Of a stretch of 64,000 nucleotides of DNA, positions 4,461 through 20,906 are shown in pieces. The number at the start of each line of letters is the position of its first letter. Within the stretch, counting starts at the first letter, position 1. A model generated the notes under the pieces. The model ran no database searches and was not told the origin of the DNA. It saw nothing but the letters and a program-made list of their open reading frames with translations. The stretch spans positions 186,001 to 250,000 of IMG/VR virus record IMGVR_UViG_3300023202_000383. The stretch is one strand, 5' to 3'. A program made the translations under genes and the position numbers.

Positions 4461-4501
4461 TCGGCTATAAGAAAAAACATTCCACAAATCAAACATATTA
4501 T

Positions 4502-5992
4502 ATGGCTAGAATAGATTGGTCAAAGTATGATCAGGCTATAGTCGACTATATGCCTAATTATTGTGCAAAAGAGTTTAGAAATCTATATGCCCCAGATATA
4601 TCCTATAGTGCTATTTGCAATAGGGCGAAGTTTCTTGGTGTTAAACCAAAGAAATATAGAATTACTGAGAAGCACAAAAAAGCAACATCAAACGGTGCGA
4701 GAAAGAAGTTAAGTTCAGATCAATATGATTATATTTCAAAGAATCTTAATAAAATCCCAAGAACTGATATAGCAAAACACTTGGGGATATCATTGCATTT
4801 AGTTACTAGAGCGTCTAAAGATCTAGGAATCCAAATAGATACAAGGAAATGGAGAAAATTTAGTGCAGATAGGTCTAAAAAACATATTCATAAAGCCACG
4901 CAAGCTTCTGTCAATAAAATAATGAATATGTCAGAATCAGAAAAGGCCGAATATTCAAAGAAGAAATCCAATGATACAAAGAAATTATGGGAAGACCCAG
5001 AATACAGGCTAAAAGTCCGTAATGGAATAAAAGCTGCCTACAATAATACAGATTTGAGAGATAGACTAAGCACAATAGGCAAAGACAGATTTAAAAATGA
5101 TAAGAGCGTCAGAGATGCACTAATAAACAAAAGTTTTGAAACTAAGAATAGCAAATTAAACGATACAATATCTATAAAATTGGATAATTTAAATATAAAA
5201 CATGATAGAGAATTTGAAATAGGTAATTATTCGTTTGATTTTAGAGTTGGCAATATTCTATTAGAGGTTAATGGAAATTATTGGCATAATTTACCCGAAA
5301 ATATTAGAAATGATCGAGCGAAATCAACCTATATAGAAAAATATACAAATTACAAATTAAAGGTCTTGTGGGAAAATGAAGCAAAATCTGTAAGATGCAA
5401 TGATAGATTATTAGAACTGCTTGAAATAAAAAAGCCGGATCAAAAACAGATAAAATTAAATGAACTAACTATAGATTACGATGTTGATAAGCTTGAATCC
5501 AGAAAATTTCTTACTAGTTTTCATTATCTTGGCGACACAAGCAGGAAAAAATATGTCTTTGGGTTAAGACTGCATGGCGAGCTCGTTTCGGTAGTTGTAT
5601 TTGGTAATTTGATAAGGCAGAACATAGATAATAATTGTTTGGAATTGTCTAGAATGTGCAGGCATCCATACTTCTACAATAAAAATATGATGAGCTGGTT
5701 TCTGTCTAAATGCACAAAATATTTAAAATCGAATTACAATTACAGTGGCATTATAAGTTATGCTGACAAAAGGTACCATGATGGTGCTGTCTATAAAGCT
5801 AGTAATTGGGGCGACTGCGGGGACACCCAGCCAGACTATTGTTACATGACTGAGGATAATATTCCAATGCACAAGAAAACTCTATATAATAGAGCGGTGA
5901 AAAAGGGTATGAAAGAAAGAGAATATGCCGAACTTATGAACATGAAAAAGACAAAAATCGGTTCTAAACGCAAATTTAAGATTACATTTTGA
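4502..5992 (+). CDS. Hef-like free-standing endonuclease (HTH/NUMOD3-like repeats + Vsr/DUF559-like nuclease + GNAT/Mom-like C-domain)
   Basis: FDF..GNILLEVNGNYWH nuclease motif; FLTSFHYLG...ELSRMC...IISYAD..YHDGAVYKASNW C-domain; AT-rich; start placed at ATG 4502 (track 4439). Confidence 0.7.
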   Translation: MARIDWSKYDQAIVDYMPNYCAKEFRNLYAPDISYSAICNRAKFLGVKPKKYRITEKHKKATSNGARKKLSSDQYDYISKNLNKIPRTDIAKHLGISLHLVTRASKDLGIQIDTRKWRKFSADRSKKHIHKATQASVNKIMNMSESEKAEYSKKKSNDTKKLWEDPEYRLKVRNGIKAAYNNTDLRDRLSTIGKDRFKNDKSVRDALINKSFETKNSKLNDTISIKLDNLNIKHDREFEIGNYSFDFRVGNILLEVNGNYWHNLPENIRNDRAKSTYIEKYTNYKLKVLWENEAKSVRCNDRLLELLEIKKPDQKQIKLNELTIDYDVDKLESRKFLTSFHYLGDTSRKKYVFGLRLHGELVSVVVFGNLIRQNIDNNCLELSRMCRHPYFYNKNMMSWFLSKCTKYLKSNYNYSGIISYADKRYHDGAVYKASNWGDCGDTQPDYCYMTEDNIPMHKKTLYNRAVKKGMKEREYAELMNMKKTKIGSKRKFKITF

Positions 5993-8204: not shown

Positions 8205-8276
8205 TATATTGTGGTGTTGTTCCGTTATGCCTGTGAAAATTCGCCCAAAGTATCTTTAAATGTATTCAAACAGAAT

Positions 8277-8963
8277 ATGAATATTGCCATTGCTATGATA
8301 GCTTGCCAGAGGCAATGTATTGGTACTCGGACTGCTATTAAAAATCTAAGATTCGGCGGGTTTTACGGGCAGGTAGATGTATTTGCTGAACCTGGTTGTG
8401 AAATTAAAAATTCAGAATTGGTAACGGTTCATAGAAATAGTGAGAACTTGGGCGGCCAGGCCAACTGGAGGCAAGCTTTATGTTGGCTTTTAGAGAATAC
8501 TAATAGCAACCACCTGATGGTAGTTGAGGATGATGTGGATTATTGCATTAGTGCCAAGAGAGCTCTCTTGAAAGCAATAAATAAGCCATATGGGTACATT
8601 AGCTTGCACACCCCAGAGAAGGACCGAGAAGCGTTAAAAACCGAATCTGGATGGGTGGATTATAATACCGGCTATGTCTGGGGGACGCAGGCAATTTGCT
8701 TCAGCAGGCACACTCTAGAGAAGTTCATTAGACACGATAAGTTATGGGAAGGTCAGGAAGAACCATATGATTTTATAATGTGTCAATTTTATAAGAACGA
8801 AATAAGTGAGCCAACATACTACCATGTCCCGTCCTTGGCCGATCACGTCGGGTGGGAGGAAACAACACTGGCAAACAAAGATATTAATCTATCGCCGAAG
8901 CATTTCAACAAGAAATGGAGACGCGGGTTGATGTTCAACAAAGAGTGGACCGATGGTTATTGA
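8277..8963 (+). CDS. Glycosyltransferase (GT-A fold, GT25-like)
   Basis: LMVVEDDV DxD-type motif, GTQAICFSR, PSLADHVG; start ATG 8277 (track 8211). Confidence 0.6.
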   Translation: MNIAIAMIACQRQCIGTRTAIKNLRFGGFYGQVDVFAEPGCEIKNSELVTVHRNSENLGGQANWRQALCWLLENTNSNHLMVVEDDVDYCISAKRALLKAINKPYGYISLHTPEKDREALKTESGWVDYNTGYVWGTQAICFSRHTLEKFIRHDKLWEGQEEPYDFIMCQFYKNEISEPTYYHVPSLADHVGWEETTLANKDINLSPKHFNKKWRRGLMFNKEWTDGY

Positions 8964-9678
8964 TATTAGTTTGTTCGATGTCGTTTTTGAACCGCTGCAC
9001 GATAAAAGAGTTGGGTATGTCATTGGAGACGGAAATGTTGGTGATGATCTAATTAATGCAGCCACATTCCAGTTGATGGATAAATATGATATTGATTATG
9101 ATATATGGTTGCCAGGAGACAATGCTAAATATGATGTGCTTACATATAGCGGCGGCGGCAATATGGGGTCATACTACCCGAAAACTTTAGCAGTAAGGAG
9201 AGAAGCATTAAAGACTGGAATTCCAGTTATTATATTGCCGCAGTCATTTATGTGGCCGGAAGATCTTGGGTATTATAAAGTATACGCTAGGGAGTTAGCT
9301 AGCTTGGAATTATGTGATGGGATTTTGGCTCCTGATTTGGCTCTTGGCTATGAAGCAGATTTTGATATTGGCGAGCCTATTTATGATGAAGGCTTGTTCC
9401 TGCGAGGTGACAGGGAGGGCTTATTTGGGGATATAGGGAGCATTGGTGATCCTATATATATGGTAAAAGACTACATTGAATATGTTGAATTGGCTAGTAG
9501 ATATAATCATGTAATAACAGACAGACTACATTTTGCAATATCGGGTCTTTTGTGCAATCGCAAAGTTACGATTCTTCCAAATTCGTATCACAAAAACATG
9601 AGCATGTATGAGACTTGGTTAAAAGACTTGGGGTGTAACTATTCAGACTCCCCAATCCTTCCCAGCGTTGGCGACTAA
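8953..9678 (+). CDS. Polysaccharide pyruvyltransferase family protein
   Basis: GNVGDDLI, SGGGNMG, ILPQSF, YARELAS, APDLAL, VITDRLHFAI, NSYHKN motifs. Confidence 0.85.
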   Translation: MVIDISLFDVVFEPLHDKRVGYVIGDGNVGDDLINAATFQLMDKYDIDYDIWLPGDNAKYDVLTYSGGGNMGSYYPKTLAVRREALKTGIPVIILPQSFMWPEDLGYYKVYARELASLELCDGILAPDLALGYEADFDIGEPIYDEGLFLRGDREGLFGDIGSIGDPIYMVKDYIEYVELASRYNHVITDRLHFAISGLLCNRKVTILPNSYHKNMSMYETWLKDLGCNYSDSPILPSVGD

Positions 9679-10335
9679 TTGGCCTGCTTCGATGTTATTC
9701 AGGCTTATATTCATGTTTCTATCCATCATTGACCTGTCTTGATTCTCGATGTTGCCATATCTGTCTTCGTCTCCGTGATCTATCCATTTTAATATATCTG
9801 TCGGTTGCCAATAAAACTTTATTCCTATTGCTCTGGCACGCATGATTAAATCGTCATCTTCGTACCCATACCCCTCAAACTCTTCATTATATCCACCCAT
9901 ATGGTAAAACCACCACCTTTTTATTGCTATCCTTCCGAATGCTCCATTCCAATGTTTGGGTTCACTTTTTGAGGCCATAAAATTATAGCCGCCATTGAAT
10001 ACCTCTCTCAGTTTTTGCATGTATTCCTTGGTTACTATGTTATCCGCGTCGAGATTTACTAATATTGCCCCATTGCCCATCTTATGTGCTATGTTTTTAG
10101 CATGTGGCGGCCTAAAATACTTTGGTTTATCGGTTCTTTTGAATTTTAACTTGCCCGTGTTGATATGGCTTTGCATATCATTGTATATCCATTCTTCTAA
10201 TCCATCGGTTGAGCCATAATCTAGAACGACGAATTCCACATCATCTTGGCTATTATTTATGCTTTCTTGGAGTGTTTGTTTTAGATGGTGCAATCGATTC
10301 ATGCAAGAAGTGCAAAAACTAATATACATATCCAT
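9643..10335 (-). CDS. Glycosyltransferase GT2 / GT7-C (galactosyltransferase-like)
   Basis: VVLDYGSTD, NLDAD, GGYNEEFEGYGYEDDDLIMRA. Confidence 0.85.
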   Translation of the reverse strand: MDMYISFCTSCMNRLHHLKQTLQESINNSQDDVEFVVLDYGSTDGLEEWIYNDMQSHINTGKLKFKRTDKPKYFRPPHAKNIAHKMGNGAILVNLDADNIVTKEYMQKLREVFNGGYNFMASKSEPKHWNGAFGRIAIKRWWFYHMGGYNEEFEGYGYEDDDLIMRARAIGIKFYWQPTDILKWIDHGDEDRYGNIENQDRSMMDRNMNISLNNIEAGQLVANAGKDWGV

Positions 10336-10366
10336 ATCCTTGGAGGTTGGACCATTTAAATACTAA

Positions 10367-10450
10367 TGCACGGAGAGGGACTTGAACCCCCAAGCCCTTT
10401 CGGGATCCGAGTTACAGTCGGAGATGCTACCAATTACGCTCTATCCGTGC
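10367..10450 (-). tRNA. tRNA-Tyr(GTA)
   Basis: Cloverleaf, anticodon loop CTGTAAC, long variable arm, TTCAAGT T-loop; no encoded CCA. Confidence 0.92.
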
Positions 10451-10469
10451 AGGCGTGAAAAGATAAATT

Positions 10470-11099
10470 ATGGAATTAAGACATCCTTTAAAGAATGATA
10501 TATGGGCTCTGGAACTATTCGACTTTATGGAGGGCGGCTTCTTTGTAGAAGCTGGTTGTACCAATGGAAAAAGCGGTTCTGCTACGTGGAATCTCGAAAA
10601 AGAATATGGATGGAATGGCCTGTGTGTGGAGCCAAACCACGTGATGTATGGGAAAATGATCAATGCTGGATGGAGATCATGTCATACAGCCAATGTTTGT
10701 TTATATGATAAGGAAGGTGAAATAACTTTTGCCGAATACCATGATGGCTCTGATGTATTCAGGAGCCATATTATAAATAACTGCAATGACAAAAATTTGC
10801 CAAAACCAGACAAGATATCAGTGAGACGATGCGTTTCGTTAACATCTCTATTGGATGAAATATCGGCACCAAAGATTATTCACTACTGCTGCTTAGATGT
10901 TGAAGGAGCCGAGTATAAGGTACTCAAAGGCATAGATTTCAATAAGTATAAGATATTGTCTATGTCTGTAGAAGTTAGTAAGAATTTCACTACTAAATGT
11001 GCTAAATTAATGCTTAAAAATGGGTATATTAGATCAACTAATAAATATACTGACAAACCATTTGAACAGTATTGGATTCACAATAGCATAACGCCCTAG
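10470..11099 (+). CDS. FkbM-family methyltransferase
   Basis: FFVEAGCTNG, GWNGLCVEPN, LDVEGAE..VLKGIDF motifs. Confidence 0.85.
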   Translation: MELRHPLKNDIWALELFDFMEGGFFVEAGCTNGKSGSATWNLEKEYGWNGLCVEPNHVMYGKMINAGWRSCHTANVCLYDKEGEITFAEYHDGSDVFRSHIINNCNDKNLPKPDKISVRRCVSLTSLLDEISAPKIIHYCCLDVEGAEYKVLKGIDFNKYKILSMSVEVSKNFTTKCAKLMLKNGYIRSTNKYTDKPFEQYWIHNSITP

Positions 11100-11164
11100 A
11101 CGGGGATCGAACCCGCAGCCTTTCGCGTGACAAGCGAATGATCTTCCACTTGATCTTCTAGGGC
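11092..11164 (-). tRNA. tRNA-Asp(GTC)
   Basis: Stem GCCCTAG/CTAGGGC, anticodon loop TTGTCAC, TTCGATC T-loop. Confidence 0.9.
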
Positions 11165-11542
11165 TTGTTCTCTATCTCTAAAATCGCATCAATCATGTCA
11201 TCAACCATCTCGAATGGGTCGAATGATGGATCGTGTGCTTCGTCCAACCTGAATTGTATTTCGTATTCAGCCTTTACGTCTACTGGCGATTTCCGTATTG
11301 CCGATAAGTCATAAAATGGGAATTCTGGTAGATCTTTTTCATATCTCTCTTATCGAATTGATCTTAGAACACCCAGCAATCCAGTCATTGCCAGATATCA
11401 AAAAGCATCCGTACAGACTAACTGACTCATGTACAACATTTAATTGCAGGTCTAAATATATCTTGTCACGCAACAGCTTGTGTATTGCGTCGACTAACGA
11501 GTTTTCTTTAGTATATGGCATAATATTCTCGCTATATTCCAA
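11158..11542 (-). pseudogene. Frameshifted member of the DPxFxP small-protein family
   Basis: ORF 11542-11339 stops in an AGAGAGATATGA context; an overlapping frame (11349-11158, 63 codons, no early start) carries HDPSFDPFEMVDDMI. Confidence 0.45.
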
Positions 11543-12054
11543 GCGTCGCTGTCACCCCTATGGTGTGTTCCTTCCATTGGGATTTTGCAGATCTCGCATG
11601 CTTCTTTAAGGCCAACTTCTCTTCTCAGTCCCGCAGCTATCGCAAACAATGTTTTTGCATTCAAATGCCGAGACCCGAAAGGATACCATATCTTGTGGGC
11701 TCTACATACCTTGTTGAATTGATTGCGGTCGTAATCGCCCCAGCTCGCCCAGAGTCGAGCGGTTGTGTCGTACTCTTCTTTGAGTATGGCACATGCTTCG
11801 GCCAGTGATATTCCGTGTTCATCTATTTGCTCTTGAGTGATGGTTGTCAATTGGGTACAGAAATCACTAATGTTAGATCTGGTTGGGGTGACCAATATGC
11901 TTCTTTTTTCTTCAGGTCGAAGCGTTTTGACATTTATCGGGCATATCCCGATCTCTATGATGTCGCTTTCTTCCCCTCTCGGAGGCGATGTGTCCCAGCA
12001 AGTGGACTCGATGTCGACCACGATTATTTTATCTTGCTTCTTATGTCTACTCAT
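11494..12054 (-). CDS. DEDDh 3'-5' exonuclease (ERI-1/KapD-like)
   Basis: VVDIESTCW, IIEIGI, WASWGDYD, GTHHRGDSDAWNIA. Confidence 0.9.
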   Translation of the reverse strand: MSRHKKQDKIIVVDIESTCWDTSPPRGEESDIIEIGICPINVKTLRPEEKRSILVTPTRSNISDFCTQLTTITQEQIDEHGISLAEACAILKEEYDTTARLWASWGDYDRNQFNKVCRAHKIWYPFGSRHLNAKTLFAIAAGLRREVGLKEACEICKIPMEGTHHRGDSDAWNIARILCHILKKTR

Positions 12055-12075
12055 AATATCTCCTTATTGATTGAA

Positions 12076-12146
12076 TCCGCCCGGATGGAGTTGAACCAAC
12101 GTCGGACCGTTATCAGCGGTCTGCTCTACCGTTGAGCTACGGGCGG
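12076..12146 (-). tRNA. tRNA-Ile(GAT)
   Basis: Cloverleaf, anticodon loop CTGATAA. Confidence 0.9.
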
Positions 12147-12221
12147 TTAAACTTGATCTATTAACTTCTGAATTCTTTTATAGGAATTGTAACAACTCTG
12201 AAGCTAGATAGAAATAATAAA

Positions 12222-12304
12222 CACGCCGGGTAGGATTCGAACCTACAGGCCCTTTGCGGGCACGGTTTTGGAGACCGCTTGGCTCACCAATGCACTGCCG
12301 ACGT
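12222..12304 (-). tRNA. Atypical class II tRNA with CCA (Trp) anticodon
   Basis: Acceptor ACGTCGG/CCGGCGT, G73, loop CTCCAAA, long V-arm GCCC-GCAAA-GGGC, T-arm GTAGG-TTCGAAT-CCTAC; non-canonical D-arm. Confidence 0.75.
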
Positions 12305-12318
12305 ATAAGAATGGGGAA

Positions 12319-12391
12319 TGGACCTGGAGGGATTCCAACCCTCGACCTCTTCCTTGCAAGGGAAGCGTTCTCGCTACTGAACTACAGGCCC
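12319..12391 (-). tRNA. tRNA-Ala(TGC)
   Basis: G3.U70 pair, loop CTTGCAA; T-loop variant TTGGAAT. Confidence 0.88.
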
Positions 12392-12424
12392 AAAATCGCA
12401 AACCGCAATTGAAATTAAATCCAA

Positions 12425-12496
12425 TGGAGCCATTGGGATTCGAACCCAAGATTCTACCATGCCATGGTAGCGTGATCCCTGTTTCACCATAGCCCC
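12425..12496 (-). tRNA. tRNA-Ala(GGC)
   Basis: G3.U70 pair, loop ATGGCAT, TTCGAAT T-loop. Confidence 0.88.
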
Positions 12497-12548
12497 ATGT
12501 GATAGGGCTTTTTATTACGCGACGCCCCGAATTCCACAAATACCGCAT

Positions 12549-13238
12549 TCAGTTTTTGTTTGCGTTGGCTTGTTCGCTAACATCCTCCCATTTTTCCCAT
12601 TCTGCTTCTAGTTTGTCTCTCGGCAAATCTGGTAGGTGGTGCATGTGTATTACTTTTGGTCTAGCAACTAATTTAAAGTTTGACGACCTAACATTCCATT
12701 CTGGCGAAAGTTTTTGTACGTTTATGTCTCTGTTGAATATTAGGTGGTTTAGAACAGATTGGTCCGATGTCCACCCTTCTTGTTCACCTATCTCATTATA
12801 TCTATCTATTGCTTCGTCTAAAACATTTATCACTCTGTCATTCATCCTATAAAATATTACACCAGTATTTAAGTGGCCTGGGTTATATCCCAAAAACAGT
12901 TTCTTGTCGTAATCAACACTCATATCTTTAGCTGCTGCGATATCAAAATTAAACCACATCACATCTTCTGGCCGACTTAGTATCTCGGTATCTGAATCGA
13001 AGAAAACTGTTTGGTCATATGGTGATGCTCGTAATGCTCGGAGTTTTGTCAAACCCCAATTATCATCCTGCTCTATTGGTCTCTGAGTTATTTTCATAGA
13101 TCCTGCCAGGGGCAGAATCGCGTCTGTGAATATGGTTATTGGTATATCACTCAGTTTCCTTAGGCTTGCTATGCTATGCAAAGCCCATCTATTGTACATT
13201 TCTCCAGTAGCAATATAAACAGCCCCATATGTCGCCAT
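12549..13238 (-). CDS. Glycosyltransferase (GT8 / nucleotide-diphospho-sugar transferase-like)
   Basis: YDQTVFFDSD, LNTGVIFY, SDQSVLN, EWNVR. Confidence 0.8.
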   Translation of the reverse strand: MATYGAVYIATGEMYNRWALHSIASLRKLSDIPITIFTDAILPLAGSMKITQRPIEQDDNWGLTKLRALRASPYDQTVFFDSDTEILSRPEDVMWFNFDIAAAKDMSVDYDKKLFLGYNPGHLNTGVIFYRMNDRVINVLDEAIDRYNEIGEQEGWTSDQSVLNHLIFNRDINVQKLSPEWNVRSSNFKLVARPKVIHMHHLPDLPRDKLEAEWEKWEDVSEQANANKN

Positions 13239-13247
13239 TATTTAAGT

Positions 13248-13424
13248 TCATTCTCCTCTGATTGCTTTATTTATTGACTTAGCCATATCTTTTACTAACT
13301 TCTCTTGTAAGTCAGTACCATGCAGCTTTTTAAGATTTTGTGTGGTTTCAAATGTCCATACTCCCATCAACTTACGTTCTTTTACAAATCGTTTGTAAAT
13401 TTGATGTAGTAGACTTCCCCACAT
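13248..13424 (-). CDS. Small protein resembling an internal segment of the T4 gp23-type major capsid protein
   Basis: 58 aa, not in the track; RKLMGVWTFETTQNLKKLHGTDLQEKLVKDMAKSI matches the recalled gp23 pattern RKLKA.W..E..QDL...HG.D.E.EL. Confidence 0.55.
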   Translation of the reverse strand: MWGSLLHQIYKRFVKERKLMGVWTFETTQNLKKLHGTDLQEKLVKDMAKSINKAIRGE

Positions 13425-13429
13425 ATCAA

Positions 13430-13834
13430 TTAAATACCGTCGCGGCTGCGGCGGGTATCCGACTCCGCGAGTGAATCGGCGATTTCGGTATTCTTGTGTG
13501 GGTATTCGCTGTCGAACTCAACAAGTAGTGCCAGTTGACTCCGCTCGTAACGCAAATGAGTATTGTCTAGATGCTCGAGCAAATTCAGCCAGAGTTCGTA
13601 TCCCGCGCCAGTGACGTTGCAGTCTTTCGCTTCGACAACGAGCTTTTTCAGCGGGGATCGGCGCTCATCCAGTTCAATTGCGTATTCGTTTAGAATCTCT
13701 TGCACCTGCGAGGTGTCATCGAGCGTCCCCGAGAGCGTGATCCTCCGAGGTCCTCGAATGAGTTTGAATTTTTCAGCCATCTGTCTTCTCCTTCTCATTC
13801 TACGATTTTGGTTGAGACTCTTGGGATGCCGCAA
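13430..13834 (-). CDS. Hypothetical protein, possibly STAS-like
   Basis: ITLSGTLD...V..IL...LVVEAKDC.V...G..W pattern; GC-richer than flanks; likely start MAEKFK. Confidence 0.45.
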   Translation of the reverse strand: MRHPKSLNQNRRMRRRRQMAEKFKLIRGPRRITLSGTLDDTSQVQEILNEYAIELDERRSPLKKLVVEAKDCNVTGAGYELWLNLLEHLDNTHLRYERSQLALLVEFDSEYPHKNTEIADSLAESDTRRSRDGI

Positions 13835-13854
13835 CCATTGTGATTGTAGCAGTT

Positions 13855-14292
13855 TCAGGTACTCTTAGGCCGAATGGATCGAAGATTCTTGTATTTCTCA
13901 AAATGAGGGCTGTCTTCTGGAATGAACAAATGATCGTGTGGCTGCATGTAGCGGATCGCGAAAGCAAGCACCGGACACGTGAGCACCGACTTCCACCGGG
14001 GATTGTAAACGGCGGGGGATCCACATCCATGGTAGAACTGGCCAAGCATGAGGCCCACATCTATAAAGATCGGCTTGATCTGGTCATATAATCTGTCAAT
14101 CGGCTCGCATGGTTTGCCTTTGGCTAGCGGGTAGCTGTCGAAAAACGTGAGAAAGGTCTTCAGGTTTGTCGGGTCGGCCGGCATGCCATCTCGGTCGACG
14201 TCATGTACGGGTTCTGTACGAAGAAAAAGCTCGATTTGTTCACACAGCTCTGTCTCAATATTGGCGCAGAAATTGTTGGGGCACGTTTCTTG
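13855..14292 (-). CDS. DUF6875-like protein (recalled family)
   Basis: GLMLGQFY..C..PAVYNP.W....CP..AFAIRYMQPHD.LF; frame open from 14292, first ATG at 14184. Confidence 0.5.
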   Translation of the reverse strand, partial: QETCPNNFCANIETELCEQIELFLRTEPVHDVDRDGMPADPTNLKTFLTFFDSYPLAKGKPCEPIDRLYDQIKPIFIDVGLMLGQFYHGCGSPAVYNPRWKSVLTCPVLAFAIRYMQPHDHLFIPEDSPHFEKYKNLRSIRPKST

Positions 14293-14557
14293 TTATATCT
14301 TCAGCTGCTTCTTGTTGATAAAAATAACTTGATACTACTAAATCCCACGGGTTTCTTACGAATGCGAATTTGAAATATTCTTCCCAACACCCAATATGTT
14401 CTTTTAATTTAGACGCTGGTACATGGTGAGCATATGGCGAGTTAGGATCATTTTTTGATCGTATATCTGAATAATCATTCAGCGCATATCTAATGCTGCT
14501 ACTGCCGGTCTTAGGTATAGCAATGAATATGAATTTGTACTTGTGTGACAGCCTCAC
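14255..14557 (-). pseudogene. Truncated sulfotransferase (Sulfotransfer_2-like N-half)
   Basis: FIFIAIPKTGSSSI and FAFVRNPWDLVVSSY are present, but the ORF ends at 100 aa where GC-richer sequence starts. Confidence 0.6.
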
Positions 14558-14760
14558 TTGGCCAATTCTTCTAGCGGGGCACCATTTTCGTCTGCTATGA
14601 TAATTCTATGACCTTGTTCTTGGTGCTTCCTGATATAGTCGAAGGCCACCACCGATCTTCGTACAACTTCTCCCGGTGCGATATTTTGGTCTAATGCACG
14701 CTGTTCGACAATTTCTTCAGCTTCACCTGTTAGGTTAACATTCATCTTCTTATCCTCCAC
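14554..14760 (-). CDS. Ribbon-helix-helix-like small DNA-binding protein
   Basis: MNVNLT.EA.EIVE..A.......EVVRRSV beta-alpha-alpha pattern. Confidence 0.55.
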   Translation of the reverse strand: MEDKKMNVNLTGEAEEIVEQRALDQNIAPGEVVRRSVVAFDYIRKHQEQGHRIIIADENGAPLEELAK

Positions 14761-14777
14761 AATATATTTGTGGAGGA

Positions 14778-15170
14778 CTATTTGGAACTACATCTCTTTG
14801 CTATTGCTTCATAATAGATTTTGGCTTTTTCATACATATCTCTTTCCAGCCAGTGCAGTCTGCAAAATACACCGAGCAGAAAGATTCTCTTAAAGTTGTT
14901 CTCCATCTCCCCGTCGTAACCATATGCGAATTTTTTCTTTTCTATATCGAACACGACTGACGAAACTGGGTCCAGCTCGGCCTCTACTCGTCCATCGGGA
15001 AGTGCTGTGAGCGTACTGTATGATACACCGCACGCCGGATCATCGACAGAAATATAAAGCTTTTTGGCTTCCGGGTTTTCTATATCATATTTTATTTTAT
15101 CATCATCAATCCAAATCAAGTTCATACCAAATGGGCCAGCGTCAGTGGATATTGTTATGCTAGTGTTCAT
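14778..15170 (-). CDS. Hypothetical, family B paralogue
   Basis: LIWIDDDKIKYDIENPEAKKLYISV. Confidence 0.7.
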   Translation of the reverse strand: MNTSITISTDAGPFGMNLIWIDDDKIKYDIENPEAKKLYISVDDPACGVSYSTLTALPDGRVEAELDPVSSVVFDIEKKKFAYGYDGEMENNFKRIFLLGVFCRLHWLERDMYEKAKIYYEAIAKRCSSK

Positions 15171-15534
15171 TATTGCTCGCTATTAATTCCAGATATTCTT
15201 TGGCACTTTTATTAAATAATTTTATGTTGTGCTTATCAAATATTATCGGAAAGTTTGTGAGGCTAGTATACACTCTGCTGTTTCTGGTCTGCGCCCATAC
15301 TCTGTTTTCAATATCTATTAAATATCCACATTCTACTAAGTAATCGAATGATTTACCAAACGATACATAAATATGGCGTGCCTTCGGATTATCAACATCG
15401 AACCTTACATTTATATTATCTAGCCATGCCAATTTTATGTCATATAAATCGCCACCAACATAGCATTTATATACGCCATTTATGGCAGTAGGTGCGCCGT
15501 CAACGTCAATCAGAAAAATATTACTCATTGCCAT
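15160..15534 (-). CDS. Hypothetical, family B paralogue
   Basis: LAWLDNINVRFDVDNPKARHIYVSF. Confidence 0.7.
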   Translation of the reverse strand: MAMSNIFLIDVDGAPTAINGVYKCYVGGDLYDIKLAWLDNINVRFDVDNPKARHIYVSFGKSFDYLVECGYLIDIENRVWAQTRNSRVYTSLTNFPIIFDKHNIKLFNKSAKEYLELIASNNEH

Positions 15535-15949
15535 AGTATTTATTCGTGTTCTTTTTGAGAAACGTTTCTGTAGTTTCTAATAGTTGCTCAAAATACTCTC
15601 TTCTGAATCCGTTTTTTGACCATTTGGTGCTTATGTCTTCCCACCCCTTAATTTGTGGTCTTACATCATGTATTGTGTGTTTATGTGTACCACCTGATTT
15701 TCTAAGCTCTCCATCATAATGGACTGCAGAGATCCGTTTGTTAATGATGTCAATTACCCAGCATATAGGCTTATGGATTTGCACACACACTAATTCAGCG
15801 TCCGGATTGTCAACGTCTTTTCTGACATATCCATTGTCATCAATCCATACTAATTCCATTTCGTTGATATATAATACCCTATTGAACAGGCTGTATTTTC
15901 TTGAACTCATTGGTATCGCCCTCGTGTCCGCAATCAGGGCAGCTACCAA
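15521..15949 (-). CDS. Hypothetical, family B paralogue
   Basis: LVWIDDNGYVRKDVDNPDAELVCVQI; likely start ATG 15910. Confidence 0.7.
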   Translation of the reverse strand: MVAALIADTRAIPMSSRKYSLFNRVLYINEMELVWIDDNGYVRKDVDNPDAELVCVQIHKPICWVIDIINKRISAVHYDGELRKSGGTHKHTIHDVRPQIKGWEDISTKWSKNGFRREYFEQLLETTETFLKKNTNKYYGNE

Positions 15950-16184
15950 TCATTTCGTTCATTGATGTGTCTGGGTGTATTTCTTTGCATGTGGCTTTTT
16001 CAGAACCACAATTTGGGCATTTGTAATATGTAGGAGTAAACTCCATATGTGTGATTGACCCGTCATCTTCGATATTCAAGCCTAGGGAATTTGCGAATTT
16101 TTTGAACCCAGGTGTAATCGATTCTGGGTCTAGCTTATTTGTTTCCTCTGACAGTACCTTATCAAGTTTATCTTTATAGTCCAT
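15879..16184 (-). CDS. Zinc-ribbon protein
   Basis: CPNCG...CPDCGH. Confidence 0.7.
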   Translation of the reverse strand: MDYKDKLDKVLSEETNKLDPESITPGFKKFANSLGLNIEDDGSITHMEFTPTYYKCPNCGSEKATCKEIHPDTSMNEMIGSCPDCGHEGDTNEFKKIQPVQ

Positions 16185-16482
16185 CGTTGTTCCCTAAACG
16201 TTTTAAAGAAAATTCAGCGTCTGCTATATATGGACCTATAGTAGCAGGATCTGACTCCCAGCCGCATATTTGCATGGCGTCTGGCCCATCGGTTATTTTG
16301 GCTGGGCCATTGTAATATTCCATGACTCTAGATGCTCTCTTATTTTCTATATCTACTACAACTATTGATGTCCAATAGTTAATTAGAACACATATAGCTT
16401 CTGAATCCGGATCATCAATGTCATGGCGGATCCGCCCATCGTCATCAACCCATACTAAACAGTTGTCCAATTTATAAAACAT
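16174..16482 (-). CDS. Hypothetical, family B paralogue
   Basis: LVWVDDDGRIRHDIDDPDSEAICVLI. Confidence 0.7.
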   Translation of the reverse strand: MFYKLDNCLVWVDDDGRIRHDIDDPDSEAICVLINYWTSIVVVDIENKRASRVMEYYNGPAKITDGPDAMQICGWESDPATIGPYIADAEFSLKRLGNNDGL

Positions 16483-16525
16483 TATTGATTGGAGGTTCGA
16501 AACTGTGCTTTGCCATATATTTGAA

Positions 16526-16796
16526 CTCCCCTGCCTGGACTTGAACCAGGAACCTAGCGGTTACAGCTACCCGGAAATTTCTATCCGGACTGGACTTTCT
16601 CTTGGCCATGTCTTTCGATTTAGGCCCATCCCGTAAAGTCTCTACACTTGCCCGGCTTTCGCCTGCTAGCTCGGTCGGGATTACCATGCCATTATGGGTT
16701 AGGCTTCCCCGAATTAGGGATGTTTTCACCATGTAGTTTCCTACATGGGCTGCAATTGTTTACAGCCGCTCGCTCTACCAATTGAGCTACAGAGGA
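16526..16796 (-). tRNA. tRNA-Asn(GTT) interrupted by a group I intron
   Basis: 5' exon TCCTCTGTAGCTCAATTGGTAGAGCGAGCGGCTGT (16796-16762) plus 3' exon TAACCGCTAGGTTCCTGGTTCAAGTCCAGGCAGGGGAG (16563-16526) rebuild the loop CTGTTAA. Confidence 0.9.
16564..16761 (-). ncRNA. Group I self-splicing intron, 198 nt, no ORF
   Basis: 5' splice after U with IGS GCAGCC pairing to GGCTGT (G.U); P2 CCATGTAG-GAAA-CTACATGG; P3 CATCCC/GGGATG; P4 AATTCGGGGAA/TCCCGA; R TGTAGAGACT; S AAGAGAAAGTCC; P9 CCGGA/TCCGG; terminal G. Confidence 0.9.
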
Positions 16797-16855
16797 ATAT
16801 ATTGATTTAGTTGGTGGCTGCCTTACCAAGTCGGCCATCCGCCAAAATTCATCGA

Positions 16856-16960
16856 TCATTCGCAATACTCATTCGTTGGGCAAAGAACCACACCATATGG
16901 TGCTTTGCAGTCAGGACACGCTACACGAGCGATTCCCTCATTCCGCACCGACCGTTTCAT
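16856..16960 (-). CDS. Small Cys-rich (Zn-ribbon-like) peptide
   Basis: 34 aa MKRSVRNEGIARVACPDCKAPYGVVLCPTNEYCE with AGGAAG RBS; not in the track. Confidence 0.5.
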   Translation of the reverse strand: MKRSVRNEGIARVACPDCKAPYGVVLCPTNEYCE

Positions 16961-16968
16961 GGCTTCCT

Positions 16969-17442
16969 TCAATACGGACTTTTGCTATCAAATCTTTTCC
17001 TAATGTTCATTATGTAATCTATGACAGCTATTATTTTGTCGATCACTTTTTGCGGATCATAATTTGGGTCGACATAGTCTCCAAATGGGAAATCGAAGAT
17101 TGCACCGGCATTAATATCTATTATCACATGAAATTTGTTGGGGTCTCCGGTTCCGTCGTTAGTAATGTTTATATTTATTGAGCCCATTTCTGACATTATT
17201 GAAAGTCGATAAGTTTCGGCTTCTTCAAGAGCGAATTGGTCAGAGTTGTCAATTAGTTCAAAAACTGGCATTTTACTTGGTGGATACCATAAGTCCACCC
17301 TCTGGTAAAATCGATTCCTGACTTCCTTTAATATCAGCTTAGCCGTCCGCAACTTTGGTTCTCGTTTTACTCGTTTTACTGGCTTGCAGCTTCTTGACCT
17401 GCAATAACAATCAACTGGGCATTTATATGGACCAGATGGCAT
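16969..17442 (-). CDS. Hypothetical, family A (DPxF/YxP) paralogue
   Basis: DYVDPNYDPQKVIDKI; N-terminal CPVDC.C..C. Confidence 0.65.
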   Translation of the reverse strand: MPSGPYKCPVDCYCRSRSCKPVKRVKREPKLRTAKLILKEVRNRFYQRVDLWYPPSKMPVFELIDNSDQFALEEAETYRLSIMSEMGSININITNDGTGDPNKFHVIIDINAGAIFDFPFGDYVDPNYDPQKVIDKIIAVIDYIMNIRKRFDSKSPY

Positions 17443-17466
17443 GTGCTATTAGTTCGGGCAGCTCTA

Positions 17467-17928
17467 TTATGATCCCATTTCAAATCCCATTAATTTGACA
17501 TTGCTGTGTGGGGTGTTTGGTTTCTCGTAAATGTTCTCCAAAAACTTATGGTGGAAGTCTTTGGTTGTGTGAATCATCTCGTTGGCTAGCAATGCAACTT
17601 CTAGCCATGTTGGGTCTTCAACTACGTCGCTCGTGTAAGGTTTGCCACCGCCAGATAACCACCCATGTTGTAATTCTTCAAACACCACTCTTCCTTCAAC
17701 GGCGATATCGTCGAGGTTGCTTAATGGGATTTTAAAAATGTTGTTTTTATATGTCTGGTAATACCCGCAATATATAACCTTGGGTTCAAAAAGAGAATTT
17801 TCCATTATGTGTCTGATGACAAAGAATCTGTTGATTTTCCAATATAGCCAATTGTCGATGCTATATAATTTGTGGATGATCCAGTCAATAATGTTCGATA
17901 TTTTGATTTCTTTGAATTCAAAATTCAT
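17467..17928 (-). CDS. Hypothetical protein
   Basis: 153 aa ORF coupled to the upstream gene. Confidence 0.65.
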   Translation of the reverse strand: MNFEFKEIKISNIIDWIIHKLYSIDNWLYWKINRFFVIRHIMENSLFEPKVIYCGYYQTYKNNIFKIPLSNLDDIAVEGRVVFEELQHGWLSGGGKPYTSDVVEDPTWLEVALLANEMIHTTKDFHHKFLENIYEKPNTPHSNVKLMGFEMGS

Positions 17929-18784
17929 TGATTATTATACCATATATATCGTCGCTGATCATCGTCGGATTTAAACACAATATGTAATTGGCAAGATTAG
18001 AGTTGCCGTGGACAAAATGATTGCACCTTGACAATAGTATAGAGTCCACCAATGCTTCTTTACCCATTTCATACGGGTCGCCAGCCGCATTTGCATGCGG
18101 TTCTCCGTCGTGCAGTCTTATCGCTGGCGTTGTTTGTATTCTTTTGCCGTACCTATCTGACATTCTATTTACCACAACCTGTGCATCTGTTCCGAGCAAT
18201 ATGTTGGCATCTGGATGCTTGTGCAGATACTTGTCTATTTTGCTCATATATAGATGATATGGCGGATTGCCCACATTAAGCAACTTGTTTAGGTATGGGA
18301 CACCACCATGTATCCTGCCTGGGCCTCTAATATGAACTCCAATTGTGTGACCACTTACTAAGTCACTATTAGAATCTGCTGCAGCAATAATTTCATCCCT
18401 AAATGGCAGATATTTGTTTATTATCTTGTTCGGTTTGTATCGATCTTTAGGTGGCAACAAGATTGTTGCCGGACCGTTGTATCTTTCTGGTTCTGGTATA
18501 GTAGGTCCGGTCCGTCGCATTATTCTATGCTGCGGATATGCTTCGAATATATCGATGTCATTTCTGGTATTGTTCGAGTCTAAAACATCGTTAAATGTGT
18601 GGTCTATACGATAAAAATATTGATCCCACGTATCGCCTGGTCCACCGGCGTTGTAATACTTGCTATTCCAATATGGCATTATGATAATATTATTATTGTC
18701 ACCATAAGAAAACGCGGTAACTGCTCTACTTATCACAACTCCTATGCCATTGTTGGCAGTAAGTGTAACGCGTAACTTATTCAT
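17918..18784 (-). CDS. NodZ / O-FucT-like fucosyltransferase
   Basis: TIGVHIRG, ILLGTD, ALVDSILLSRCNHFVHGNSNL GDP-fucose-binding motifs. Confidence 0.75.
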   Translation of the reverse strand: MNKLRVTLTANNGIGVVISRAVTAFSYGDNNNIIIMPYWNSKYYNAGGPGDTWDQYFYRIDHTFNDVLDSNNTRNDIDIFEAYPQHRIMRRTGPTIPEPERYNGPATILLPPKDRYKPNKIINKYLPFRDEIIAAADSNSDLVSGHTIGVHIRGPGRIHGGVPYLNKLLNVGNPPYHLYMSKIDKYLHKHPDANILLGTDAQVVVNRMSDRYGKRIQTTPAIRLHDGEPHANAAGDPYEMGKEALVDSILLSRCNHFVHGNSNLANYILCLNPTMISDDIYGIIINEF

Positions 18785-19101
18785 TGTGTTAAATTAGACA
18801 GGTATCGTGATATCATTTCTGTATCATATCTCGGTTTATAATATTTATCGATCTTTGATAATTTGATAACCCATTCGATCAGTTCCTGGGGGTTGAAATT
18901 GGGGTCTGTTATGTCATAATCTTTGCGCAGCGGGCACGCTGTCGCCCATCTTTGAACAATAGTTTCACTGTTAGATATCCTAGCGAGTTCATGCCCAATA
19001 CCAGTTGCCTTAATTCTAGTATGGTCATTTAATCTCCATACATGTGTGCATGGAAGTTGGTCTGATATAGCACACGCGATTTCTAAGTGGAATTGCTTCA
19101 T
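18781..19101 (-). CDS. Hypothetical, family A paralogue
   Basis: YDITDPNFNPQELIEWV. Confidence 0.7.
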   Translation of the reverse strand: MKQFHLEIACAISDQLPCTHVWRLNDHTRIKATGIGHELARISNSETIVQRWATACPLRKDYDITDPNFNPQELIEWVIKLSKIDKYYKPRYDTEMISRYLSNLTQ

Positions 19102-19225
19102 AATGGGGAGATTACGCTCGCCGCTTTTTGGCCATTGCGAAGTTGGCTATCCATGCCGCCTCCCCGATAACTACTGATACATATGTGCGAAGCACATAAT
19201 AATTTATGTGTCAAACATAACTTAA

Positions 19226-19311
19226 CAGCGGCTGTAGGATTCGAACCTACGTGGGGCTTGTAGCCCTGCAGCTTCAAAGGCTGCCGCGATCGTCCACTCC
19301 GCCAAGCCGCT
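19226..19311 (-). tRNA. Atypical class II tRNA with TTG (Gln) anticodon
   Basis: Acceptor AGCGGCT/AGCCGCT, G73, class II D-arm GCG-GAGTGGACGAT-CGC, loop CTTTGAA, V-arm GGGCT-ACA-AGCCC, T-arm GTAGG-TTCGAAT-CCTAC. Confidence 0.8.
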
Positions 19312-19321
19312 AGGTGCAAAA

Positions 19322-20012
19322 ATGAGCAAATTAGATAATATTCCAAAAGATAGGTTTATAAAAACATATGAATCGTCTGAATCAATAAGCGATATGCTGC
19401 TAAAAATGCGGATTAATTGCCGCTGGCGGAAACTATAAGACTCTTAAAAATAGACTCAAAATCTATGATCTTGACTACGACGAGCTTAAAAGCCGAGGAC
19501 GTAATTCAGCAAATTCTAAGCTGATTACAAATAAAGGCGTGCCACTAGATGAAATTATGGTGGAAAATTCAACATATAAAAGAAGTAGCTTAAAACATAG
19601 GATCATAAGATCTGGAATAATTCCATATAAATGCGCTATCTGTGACCAGAATTCAACATGGCGCGGCGAGAATCTTACATTAATTCTAGATCATATCAAT
19701 GGTGTTGGTAATGATCATAGAAAAGAGAATTTGAGATTCTTATGTCCAAATTGCAACAGCCAAACTCCAACATTTGCTGGTCGGAACATAGATTGGTCTG
19801 GTACAAAAAATAAGTGTGTCGATTGCAATAATATCATTACTAGAAAAGCGTTAAGATGTCCAAAATGTAATAGTATAAATAGGCGTAAAATCGAGTGGCC
19901 AGACAATTTATCAGATTTGGTTGCTGAGTCGTCTAAATTAGCGGTTGCAAAATCTCTTGGAGTATCTAATGTTGCCGTTGCGAAACGCCTAAAGTATATA
20001 AACCAAGTTTAG
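19322..20012 (+). pseudogene. HNH homing endonuclease with a +1 frameshift near 19409
   Basis: LILDHINGVGNDHRKENLRFLCPNCNSQT; the N-terminal GGNYKTLK segment is out of frame with ATG 19322; total span 691 nt = 3n+1. Confidence 0.75.
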
Positions 20013-20024
20013 CTGCCTATTACA

Positions 20025-20690: not shown

Positions 20691-20692
20691 AA

Positions 20693-20764: not shown

Positions 20765-20767
20765 ATA

Positions 20768-20880: not shown

Positions 20881-20906
20881 TGAACTTGTCAAAGATCACT
20901 TCTTAA

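What the first reader, a model, noticed from the sequence alone, without database searches (positions are those of the whole stretch)
12222..12304. Class II (long variable arm) tRNA with a Trp CCA anticodon and Sec-like features
Seen: 83-nt cloverleaf with A1-U72, G73, loop CTCCAAA, a 4-bp V-stem, C at position 8, and a D-arm that folds best as a long stem with a TTGG loop. Known: bacterial long V-arms are normally restricted to Ser, Leu, Tyr and Sec, and the V-arm is the main SerRS determinant. The loop is one base from the tRNA-Sec loop CTTCAAA. A1-U72 and G73 fit Trp identity. Inference: either a remodelled Trp tRNA (e.g. nuclease-resistant), a missense tRNA that puts Ser or Leu at UGG, or a UGA-reading variant (see the GHKL TGA finding).
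Basis: partly seen in the sequence, partly recalled or inferred. Interest (0 to 1): 0.8.

Follow-up and report, generated by a model that had tools for sequence, protein, structure and literature searches.

The report
Phage tryptophan tRNA with extra arm
A large uncultured phage encodes a tryptophan tRNA carrying the long extra arm that bacteria normally reserve for serine, leucine and tyrosine tRNAs, and it belongs to a widespread, apparently undescribed family of phage tRNAs that keep every mark of tryptophan identity.

Summary
A tRNA gene lies on the minus strand at 12222-12304, with anticodon CCA, A1-U72, G73, C8 and a 15-nt variable region forming a 4-bp hairpin. Three separately assembled samples carry it without a single difference.

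It is not a one-off. In cellular genomes the same pattern gave only 16 of 120, several of them in phage-like tRNA arrays.

Across the family the cloverleaf and the variable-arm helix both covary. The 1-72 pair is A-U, G-U or U-A in about 85%, and N73 is G in about 92%. The variable stems are short (3-4 bp), like phage Tyr tRNAs and unlike phage Ser tRNAs (5-7 bp).

The window tRNA lacks the G1-C72 and G2-C71 of bacterial tRNA-Ser. It has C2-G71, a known SerRS antideterminant, and G73, which blocks LeuRS and TyrRS. TGA is the commonest stop in the window, and UGG sits at invariant Trp positions.

Verdict: a genuine UGG-reading, Trp-accepting phage tRNA on a class II scaffold. It is not Sec-like, not a Ser/Leu missense tRNA and not a UGA reader. 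Why the arm is kept is unresolved. I found no published description.

The parts
12222..12304 (-). Class II tRNA-Trp(CCA) gene, 83 nt from position 1 to discriminator 73. No CCA end is encoded.
   Evidence: ARAGORN; Rfam RF00005 at 37.3 bits; bracket structure; identical in three assemblies
12298..12304 (-). Acceptor stem 5' strand (ACGUCGG), giving A1-U72 and C2-G71
12280..12297 (-). C8, A9 and the degenerate D arm. Only G12-C23 and C13-G22 pair. The loop is AUUGGUGA, with A14, G18-G19 and A21 present.
   Evidence: covariation of the two inner pairs in relatives
12262..12278 (-). Anticodon arm, with anticodon CCA at 12269-12271. The 15-nt core CGGUCUCCAAAACCG is identical to E. coli trpT.
12247..12261 (-). 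Variable arm: 4-bp stem GCCC/GGGC, loop GCAAA, 2 unpaired 3' nucleotides (CU)
   Evidence: the helix covaries in the subfamily and in the wider family
12230..12246 (-). T arm (GUAGG / UUCGAAU / CCUAC)
12222..12229 (-). Acceptor stem 3' strand and discriminator G73 (at 12222)
19226..19311 (-). Second non-canonical class II tRNA of the same phage: tRNA-Gln(UUG). It has a 17-nt variable region, A1-U72, G73, and the same T arm as the Trp tRNA.
   Evidence: family of 41 distinct class II Gln tRNAs in IMG/VR
10367..10450 (-). The phage's ordinary class II tRNA-Tyr(GUA). Its short variable hairpin (CCC-GAAA-GGG) is the closest structural analogue of the Trp variable arm within the window.
12076..12497 (-). 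The tRNA cluster that holds the gene, in transcript order Ala(GGC), Ala(UGC), Trp(CCA), Ile(GAU). The Ala-then-Trp order recurs in related huge-phage contigs.

Best explanation
This is a working phage tRNA-Trp. It is most likely charged with tryptophan by the host TrpRS and reads UGG. It is built on a class II body with a variable arm instead of the class I body that cellular Trp tRNAs have. It belongs to a diversified, essentially phage-restricted family of class II Trp tRNAs.

The variable arm is a conserved structural helix and not an identity switch. It is short, like the Tyr arm, which keeps it below what SerRS normally reads. TrpRS identity rests on the anticodon, G73 and the 1-72 pair, so the arm can be tolerated.

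Shown here:
- The gene exists and is reproducibly assembled.
- The family exists and is concentrated in phages.
- The cloverleaf and the variable helix are under selection.
- The Trp identity marks are conserved.
- UGG means Trp in this phage, and TGA is a stop.

Inferred, not shown: the reason the arm is kept. My preferred reading is that it makes the phage's Trp tRNA structurally unlike the host's, so that a tRNA-targeting nuclease (host defence or phage shut-off) that recognises host tRNA-Trp spares it. In this particular subfamily the arm may also brace a tRNA core whose D stem has shrunk to two pairs.
For: - **Gene and structure:**
- **Reproducible assembly:**
- **Family size:** ARAGORN of them tRNA-Trp(cca) of 81-92 nt, and 77 are distinct.
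- **Phage enrichment:** only 16 of 120 hits in 185,579 cellular genomes are such tRNAs, and several lie in tRNA arrays.
- **Selection on the fold:** 19 of 20 cloverleaf pairs show compensatory changes in 71 sequences.
- **Selection on the variable helix:** its three core pairs each show GC, CG, AU and UA types in 32 sequences, with 0 of 500 shuffles reaching the observed scores. In the 19 closest relatives the pairs read GC11/GU5/AU1, CG7/GC5/UA5 and CG13/UA2/AU1/GC1/UG1.
- **Trp identity in the family:** 1-72 is A-U 37, G-U 22, U-A 6 of 77, and N73 is G in 71 of 77. Phage tRNA-Ser in the same loci has G1-C72 in 38 of 41.
- **Published identity rules:** PMC9976931.
- **Similarity to E. coli trpT:** the anticodon-arm core is identical.
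- **Arm length:** the variable stem is 3-4 bp in Trp, 3 bp in phage Tyr and 5-7 bp in phage Ser.
- **Other isotypes:** other non-canonical class II tRNAs in the same phages keep their own discriminators (Lys A73, Cys U73, Asn G73, Met A73), which argues against a common Ser identity.
- **Codon meaning:** UGG stands at three invariant Trp positions of the phage Gmd. Stop usage is TGA 34, TAG 27, TAA 26.
- **Precedent for the evasion idea:** phage T5 tRNA-Tyr escapes retron-Eco7, which cleaves the variable loop, because its variable loop differs (as summarised in PMC13096335, which cites PMC11555353).
- **Non-redundancy hint:** four loci hold both a class I and a class II Trp tRNA.
Against: - No RNA run could be listed, so there is no evidence of expression, aminoacylation or the mature 3' end.
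- G73 plus a variable arm is also the core of Ser identity, and the window's 4-bp stem overlaps the low end of phage tRNA-Ser stems (6 of 41 have 4 bp). Some serylation cannot be excluded by sequence alone.
- C8 and a 2-bp D stem are unusual and could reduce function.
- The minor B. subtilis element G5-C68 is C5-G68 here.
- Nothing in the window links the arm to any nuclease or defence system. The evasion role is analogy only.
- Class II Trp tRNAs are a minority: 0 of 20 Trp tRNAs are class II in an independent sample of phage loci.
- The host is unknown, and there is no cultured relative (best match 26% identity).
Confidence: 0.6

Rival explanations
1. Neutral legacy. The tRNA is a functional Trp tRNA, but the variable arm has no benefit of its own. 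It is left over from remoulding of a class II template (most plausibly tRNA-Tyr, possibly tRNA-Ser) by anticodon and acceptor-end changes within fast-evolving phage tRNA arrays. It is kept only because breaking the helix would misfold the tRNA.
For: - Most family members have a full class II type D arm, with a 3-bp stem and a long loop such as GCCGAGUGGUUAAAGGC.
- C8 is common in phage Tyr (8 of 20) and class II Trp (25 of 73). It is rare in Ser (2 of 41) and Leu (1 of 48), and it is not among the three commonest bases at position 8 in 443 class I tRNAs.
- The variable stems have Tyr-like length.
- The only cultured-phage BLAST hit of the window tRNA is a T5-like Aeromonas phage tRNA-Tyr, and the alignment shows a shared 23-nt 3' segment.
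- Almost every isotype occurs as class II at low frequency.
Against: - No recent paralogy was found. The nearest tRNA in the same locus is only 50-70% identical and of no consistent isotype.
- The geometry differs among subfamilies, with 1, 2 or 3 unpaired 3' nucleotides, which suggests repeated gain or long maintenance.
- Some phages carry both a class I and a class II Trp tRNA.
Confidence: 0.25
2. Missense tRNA. SerRS charges it through the variable arm and G73, so it inserts Ser at UGG. Alternatively LeuRS or TyrRS charges it.
For: - Variable arm plus G73.
- SerRS ignores the anticodon (PMC9976931).
- Precedents exist: nev-tRNAs (PMC3333845) and allo-tRNAs (PMC5389517).
- Some solitary class II CCA tRNAs in bacterial genomes do look Ser-like, with G1-C72, G2-C71, G73 and a 5-bp variable stem (L194).
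Against: - A1-U72 and C2-G71 replace the G1-C72 and G2-C71 conserved in bacterial tRNA-Ser, and C2-G71 is a documented SerRS antideterminant.
- G73 excludes LeuRS and TyrRS, which need A73.
- Family-wide, 1-72 is weak in about 85% of members, against G-C in 93% of phage tRNA-Ser.
- The variable stems are shorter than Ser stems.
- UGG stands at invariant Trp positions.
Confidence: 0.05
3. UGA reader. The remodelled D arm acts like the Hirsh suppressor change in E. coli tRNA-Trp (my recollection, not checked here). It would let the CCA anticodon read UGA for programmed read-through of a phage gene.
For: - D-arm positions 10-25 and 11-24 are mismatched, and position 24 is the Hirsh site (the Hirsh part is my own knowledge).
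Against: - TGA is the commonest terminator (34 of 87), and the standard code gives 92% coding.
- I could not locate the GHKL/TGA case. The two candidate TGA-separated ORF pairs gave no Pfam match.
- Most family members have normal D stems.
Confidence: 0.04
4. Not a translational tRNA. It could be a decaying pseudogene, a processing signal in the polycistronic transcript, or a decoy.
For: - C8, the 2-bp D stem and a low Rfam score (37 bits, against 55-68 for its neighbours).
- The MFE z-score is only -1.5.
- There are no expression data.
Against: - The same odd features are conserved with compensatory changes in 19 relatives from unrelated samples.
- The anticodon loop, T loop, G18-G19, A14 and A21 are intact.
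- It is the only Trp tRNA gene found in the 64-kb window.
Confidence: 0.06

Closest known systems
Bacterial tRNA-Trp (e.g. E. coli trpT)
   Same: Anticodon CCA, A1-U72, G73, U31-A39 and a 15-nt identical anticodon-arm core. The T loop and the D-loop GG are also shared (identity rules in PMC9976931).
   Different: The cellular form is class I (trpT is 76 nt including CCA). This tRNA has a 15-nt variable region with a 4-bp hairpin, C8 instead of U8, only two D-stem pairs, and no encoded CCA.
Bacterial and phage tRNA-Tyr (class II with a short variable arm)
   Same: A short 3-4-bp variable stem capped by a 4-5-nt loop, with unpaired nucleotides on its 3' side. C8 is frequent in both phage Tyr and class II Trp. 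The 3' segment is shared with a T5-like phage tRNA-Tyr.
   Different: Tyr has A73, G1-C72 and anticodon GUA. This tRNA has G73, A1-U72 and CCA, so TyrRS should reject it.
nev-tRNAs of nematodes (PMC3333845)
   Same: Class II tRNAs carrying anticodons of class I amino acids.
   Different: By that paper's abstract, nev-tRNAs decode an alternative code for leucine, so they misread. Here the acceptor-end identity matches the anticodon, so no recoding is expected. The setting is also different: phage rather than eukaryote.
allo-tRNAs (PMC5389517)
   Same: A long variable arm, G73 or U73, non-Ser anticodons, found in metagenomes and some phages.
   Different: allo-tRNAs have 8/4 or 9/3 acceptor/T branches and a tRNA-Sec-like D arm, and they are predicted Ser acceptors. 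This tRNA is 7/5 with Trp identity marks.
tRNA-Sec
   Same: Variable arm and G73. The loop differs from CUUCAAA by one base.
   Different: tRNA-Sec has an 8/5 branch, a 6-bp D stem with a 4-nt loop and anticodon UCA. None of these is present or supported by covariation.
Phage T5 tRNA-Tyr that escapes retron-Eco7 (PMC11555353, PMC13096335)
   Same: A phage tRNA whose variable region differs from the host's, which makes it resistant to a defence nuclease that cuts there.
   Different: That case is a sequence variant within an isotype that is already class II. Here a whole arm sits on an isotype that is class I in cells, and no nuclease partner is known.

Membership tests
tRNA (Rfam RF00005) | Full-length match to the covariance model above the gathering score | tested here: met
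   37.3 bits against 29, model positions 1-71. The default filters missed it.
Bacterial-type tRNA-Trp | Anticodon C34 C35 A36 | tested here: met
   Loop CUCCAAA
Bacterial-type tRNA-Trp | Discriminator G73 | tested here: met
   G at 12222; G in 71 of 77 family members
Bacterial-type tRNA-Trp | A1-U72 first pair (G1-U72 in some systems) | tested here: met
   A1-U72 here. In the family: A-U 37, G-U 22, U-A 6 of 77. Rule from PMC9976931.
Bacterial-type tRNA-Trp | Charged with Trp by TrpRS | not testable with these tools
   Needs an aminoacylation assay
Class II tRNA | Variable region of 10 or more nucleotides forming a stem-loop | tested here: met
   15 nt with a 4-bp stem; the helix covaries
Bacterial tRNA-Ser | G1-C72 and G2-C71 conserved, with a long variable arm whose size is the main determinant | tested here: not met
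   A1-U72 and C2-G71 here. The 4-bp stem compares with 5-7 bp in 35 of 41 phage tRNA-Ser genes.
tRNA-Leu / tRNA-Tyr | Discriminator A73 | tested here: not met
   G73. All 48 class II Leu and 20 class II Tyr tRNAs of the phage loci have A73.
tRNA-Sec | 8/5 acceptor/T branch, 6-bp D stem with a 4-nt loop, anticodon UCA | tested here: not met
   7/5 fold. U(-1) opposite N73 occurs in eight of the nine tRNA genes of the window. The alternative D stem is not supported by covariation. The anticodon is CCA.
allo-tRNA | 8/4 or 9/3 acceptor/T branch | tested here: not met
   5-bp T stem and 7-bp acceptor stem, both covarying in the family

The most novel reading that the evidence does not exclude
Class II conversion of normally class I tRNAs (Trp, Gln, Lys, His, Cys, Asn, Met and others) is a general and so far unrecognised phage strategy. 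The added arm marks phage tRNAs as structurally different from host tRNAs. They would then survive host tRNA-cleaving defence systems, or the phage's own destruction of host tRNAs, while the host synthetases still charge them. This window's phage uses it for at least Trp and Gln.
Probability: 0.25. Interest if true: 0.85.

Novelty: new variant of a known kind. Interest (0 to 1): 0.68.

Why it matters
Textbook tRNA biology says that in bacteria only Leu, Ser, Tyr and Sec tRNAs carry a long variable arm, and that the arm is a key signal for SerRS. This work found dozens of distinct phage Trp tRNAs with a conserved, covarying arm and intact Trp identity marks. It also found parallel families for Gln (41 distinct) and smaller sets for Lys, His, Cys, Asn and Met.

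- The class I / class II division is therefore not fixed by isotype.
- The family gives a natural test set for how TrpRS, GlnRS and LysRS tolerate an arm, and for how SerRS rejects one.
- It may be a new layer in the conflict over tRNAs between phages and bacterial defence.
- It matters for annotation, because default Rfam filtering missed this gene.
- It offers natural scaffolds for tRNA engineering, such as arms that can carry tags.

Tried and rejected
1. **Near-identical cultured phage.** None was found: megablast of 5 kb gave no match, and a protein search gave at most 26% identity.
2. **Origin by recent duplication of a neighbouring tRNA.** Rejected. The nearest tRNA in each locus is 50-70% identical and of no consistent isotype.
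3. **Stop-codon recoding.** Rejected.
Not located. Two TGA-separated ORF pairs gave no Pfam match.
5. **RNA evidence.** No RNA run could be listed.
6. **Promoter and terminator scan around the cluster.** No more hits than in shuffles.
7. **Hairpin length against shuffles of the variable region alone.** Only a weak test (3.75 against 2.8 bp). The aligned pair counts are the informative ones.
8. **RNAalifold on the MAFFT alignment of all 71 sequences.** It did not recover the variable helix because registers differ between subfamilies. Sub-alignments were needed.
9. **BLAST of the tRNA against E. coli genomes.** No match, because the query is too short. trpT was fetched by accession instead.
10. 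**Cultured phages with a true class II Trp hairpin.** BLAST with three further family members found none. The nearest cases are:
    - Brevundimonas phage Kabachok: an 82-nt Trp tRNA with an 8-nt variable loop.
    - Caulobacter phage CcrBL9: an 87-nt tRNA-Lys(CUU).
11. **Literature.** Nine searches found no description of 7/5 class II Trp tRNAs in phages.
12. **Neighbouring ORFs.** They are glycosyltransferases, a methyltransferase and a DEDDh exonuclease. None is an obvious tRNA partner.

Full report
**1. What is there**

ARAGORN finds nine tRNA genes in the window, all on the minus strand. One is a tRNA-Trp(cca) at 12221-12305. Rfam's tRNA model matches 12222-12304 over its full length at 37.3 bits (gathering score 29). 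It does so only with the permissive filters; the default scan of the whole window lists seven tRNAs and misses this one.

The sequence and the ARAGORN bracket string give the following:
- a 7-bp acceptor stem with A1-U72 and C2-G71;
- C8 and A9;
- a D region in which only G12-C23 and C13-G22 pair, around an AUUGGUGA loop;
- a 5-bp anticodon stem with loop CUCCAAA;
- a 15-nt variable region with stem GCCC/GGGC, loop GCAAA and two unpaired 3' nucleotides;
- a normal T arm;
- discriminator G73.

No CCA is encoded.

The gene is not an assembly error. Contigs assembled separately from three samples of one study cover it with zero differences. An IMG/VR contig of 256,507 bp holds the identical sequence (L067).

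**2. Setting**

The window is part of a large uncultured phage. It encodes:
- a P2-I-like tail protein;
- three Mom-like proteins;
- an intein-bearing helicase;
- a homing endonuclease;
- glycosyltransferases and a GDP-mannose dehydratase.

GC content is 42%. No cultured phage is close. A greedy gene call gives 87 genes at 92% coding density in the standard code. Stops are TGA 34, TAG 27 and TAA 26, and TGG makes up 18.2 per 1000 codons. There is no sign of stop-codon recoding.

**3. It is one of many**

I scanned IMG/VR for the Trp anticodon loop followed 19-30 nt later by the T-loop core. That spacing needs a long variable region. ARAGORN of these loci tRNA-Trp(cca) of 81-92 nt, and 77 are distinct sequences.

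The same pattern in one genome for each of 185,579 bacterial and archaeal species also reached 120 rows. There only 16 are such tRNAs. Several of those sit in dense tRNA arrays typical of phage DNA, and a few solitary ones look like Ser tRNAs.

In an independent sample of phage loci, fetched for another reason, 0 of 20 Trp tRNAs are class II. The class II form is therefore a minority, but a large and diverse one, and it is concentrated in phages. Many source contigs exceed 100 kb.

**4. The family is under selection as a tRNA with an extra helix**

- In 71 aligned members, 19 of 20 cloverleaf pairs show compensatory double changes.
- In a 32-sequence sub-alignment sharing one register, the three core pairs of the variable stem each occur as GC, CG, AU and UA. 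None of 500 shuffles reaches the observed covariation, and slid controls collapse.
- A second scan targeted the window tRNA's own D loop. It found 5 IMG/VR loci (including the source contig L067 and L040) and 28 metagenome loci. Nearly all of the Trp tRNAs they hold are 78-85 nt.
- In the resulting 19 distinct close relatives, the variable-stem pairs read GC11/GU5/AU1, CG7/GC5/UA5 and CG13/UA2/AU1/GC1/UG1.
- In the same relatives the two inner D-stem pairs also covary (UA8/CG5/GC3 and CG13/UA4/GC1/UG1).

The odd features of the window tRNA are therefore conserved traits of a lineage and not decay. Those features are C8, a two-pair D stem, an arm that starts right after position 43, and a 2-nt 3' linker.

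The alternative Sec-like D hairpin would pair position 12 with the invariant A21. It fails because position 12 covaries with position 23 instead.

Relatives L040 and L244 (the latter from a 357-kb contig) show the same Ala-genes-then-Trp order as the window.

**5. Which amino acid**

The review PMC9976931 gives these published rules:

| Synthetase | What it reads |
|---|---|
| Bacterial TrpRS | The anticodon, G73 and the first pair. This is A1-U72, or G1-U72 in rice mitochondria. U31-A39 is a predicted determinant. |
| Bacterial SerRS | Mainly the size of the extra arm. G1-C72 and G2-C71 are conserved in tRNA-Ser. C2-G71 is an antideterminant. |
| LeuRS and TyrRS | They need A73. G73 is an antideterminant. 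|

The window tRNA has CCA, G73, A1-U72, U31-A39 and C2-G71. Its anticodon arm shares a 15-nt identical core with E. coli trpT.

Across the family:
- 1-72 is A-U (37), G-U (22) or U-A (6) of 77.
- N73 is G in 71 of 77.
- tRNA-Ser genes in the same loci have G1-C72 in 38 of 41.
- Leu and Tyr genes in the same loci all have A73.

Variable stems are 3-4 bp in class II Trp and 3 bp in phage Tyr. They are 4-5 bp in Leu and 5-7 bp in Ser.

Other class II tRNAs of class I isotypes in these phages keep their own discriminators: Lys A73, Cys U73, Asn G73 and Met A73. That is what is expected if each is still charged by its own synthetase, and not if the arm made them all Ser acceptors.

Finally, the three Trp residues of the phage's GDP-mannose 4,6-dehydratase align with invariant Trp in solved homologues. 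UGG therefore still means Trp for this phage. I conclude that this is a Trp acceptor reading UGG. This is inference from sequence; no charging assay exists.

**6. Why an arm**

This is the weak point. Two facts are shown:
- The arm is conserved.
- It is not confined to Trp. The same phage has a class II tRNA-Gln(UUG) at 19226-19311, and a scan finds 41 distinct class II Gln tRNAs in IMG/VR.

My preferred reading is that the arm makes the phage tRNA unlike its host counterpart and so protects it from a tRNA-directed nuclease. The only support is analogy:
- T5 tRNA-Tyr resists retron-Eco7 because its variable loop differs (as summarised in PMC13096335).
- A few phages keep both a class I and a class II Trp gene.

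The main rival is that the arm is a neutral remnant of remoulding from a class II template. The following fit a Tyr-like origin:
- C8 is enriched in both phage Tyr and class II Trp.
- The stems are of Tyr-like length.
- The window tRNA's BLAST hit is to a T5-like phage tRNA-Tyr.

TyrRS and TrpRS are sister enzymes with a similar way of docking tRNA (my own knowledge, not tested here), which would make a Tyr-like arm easy for TrpRS to tolerate. However, no recent paralogy is detectable. The geometry also differs between subfamilies, so the origin is open.

In the window's subfamily the arm may additionally compensate for the shrunken D stem. That is speculation.

**7. Comparison with known systems**

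- It works like an ordinary bacterial tRNA-Trp and passes every sequence-level identity test for one.
- It differs in architecture from every cellular Trp tRNA that I know of.
- It is not an allo-tRNA (those are 8/4 or 9/3, with Ser identity).
- It is not a tRNA-Sec.
- It is unlike nematode nev-tRNAs, because identity and anticodon agree.

Nine full-text searches found no description of such phage tRNAs. GenBank records of cultured jumbo phages simply label related long tRNAs as tRNA-Trp or tRNA-Lys. The library does not cover all journals, so prior mention elsewhere cannot be excluded.

**8. Verdict**

The Sec-like, missense and UGA readings are not supported. The remodelled Trp tRNA reading is supported and extends to a large phage-specific family. 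The function of the arm remains to be tested.

Noticed in passing
window 19226-19311 (-): A second non-canonical class II tRNA: tRNA-Gln(UUG), 86 nt, with a 17-nt variable region, A1-U72, G73, and a T arm identical to that of the Trp tRNA. A pattern scan found 41 distinct class II Gln(UUG) tRNAs in IMG/VR, and most of their ARAGORN sequences begin with U.
   Followed up: partly
window: all nine tRNA genes (10366-20979, minus strand): None of the nine tRNA genes encodes CCA. In eight of them a U at position -1 can pair with the discriminator, so ARAGORN draws 8-bp acceptor stems. This looks like a shared precursor-processing feature of this phage.
   Followed up: no
window 10367-10450 (-): The phage tRNA-Tyr scores below Rfam's gathering score (26.9 bits) because Infernal chooses a shifted acceptor register. 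It also has an A11-A24 mismatch in the D stem.
   Followed up: no
window 11494-12054 (-): A DEDDh exonuclease of the RNase_T Pfam family lies directly downstream of tRNA-Ile in the same orientation. It could trim the 3' trailers of the CCA-less phage tRNAs, or it could be a DNA proofreading subunit.
   Followed up: no
window 4439-5992 (+), 57521-59023 (-), 60911-62428 (+): Three paralogous proteins of about 500 aa with C-terminal Mom-family domains, one of which also scores as GNAT. This hints at DNA hypermodification.
   Followed up: no
window 36328-38415 (+): A helicase (ResIII plus Helicase_C) interrupted by an intein with a LAGLIDADG endonuclease.
   Followed up: no
window 8211-13238 and 28907-32386: A dense set of sugar-chemistry genes surrounds the tRNA cluster. 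It includes several GT2/GT8-like glycosyltransferases, an FkbM methyltransferase and a GDP-mannose 4,6-dehydratase very close to cellular enzymes (E = 1.9e-124 to PDB 1n7g).
   Followed up: partly
L040 7222-7585 and L244 3356-3719: Related huge-phage contigs carry a tmRNA gene inside the tRNA array, close to their class II Trp tRNA. The tag peptide is AEDIMSIPTSLTRGRSVFVESAELIAA.
   Followed up: no
L246 7996-8082 (Caulobacter phage CcrBL9) and L245 5974-6055 (Brevundimonas phage Kabachok): Cultured jumbo phages hold long versions of class I isotypes. One is an 87-nt tRNA-Lys(CUU) with a class II type D arm and U73. The other is an 82-nt tRNA-Trp with an 8-nt variable loop. Both are annotated without comment.
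   Followed up: partly
L194 (Pelagibius sp. 7325, 1.5-Mb scaffold), and also L208, L213, L231, L238: Solitary class II tRNAs with a CCA anticodon call in bacterial chromosomes. Their sequences begin with GG (ARAGORN sequences). L194, read by eye, has G1-C72, G2-C71, G73, an encoded CCA and a 5-bp variable stem. It is a candidate genuine Ser-at-UGG missense or regulatory tRNA, distinct from the phage family.
   Followed up: no
IMG/VR loci L001-L120: C at position 8 is common in phage tRNA-Tyr (8 of 20) and class II tRNA-Trp (25 of 73). It is rare in Ser (2 of 41) and Leu (1 of 48), and it is not among the three commonest bases at position 8 in 443 class I tRNAs of the same loci.
   Followed up: partly
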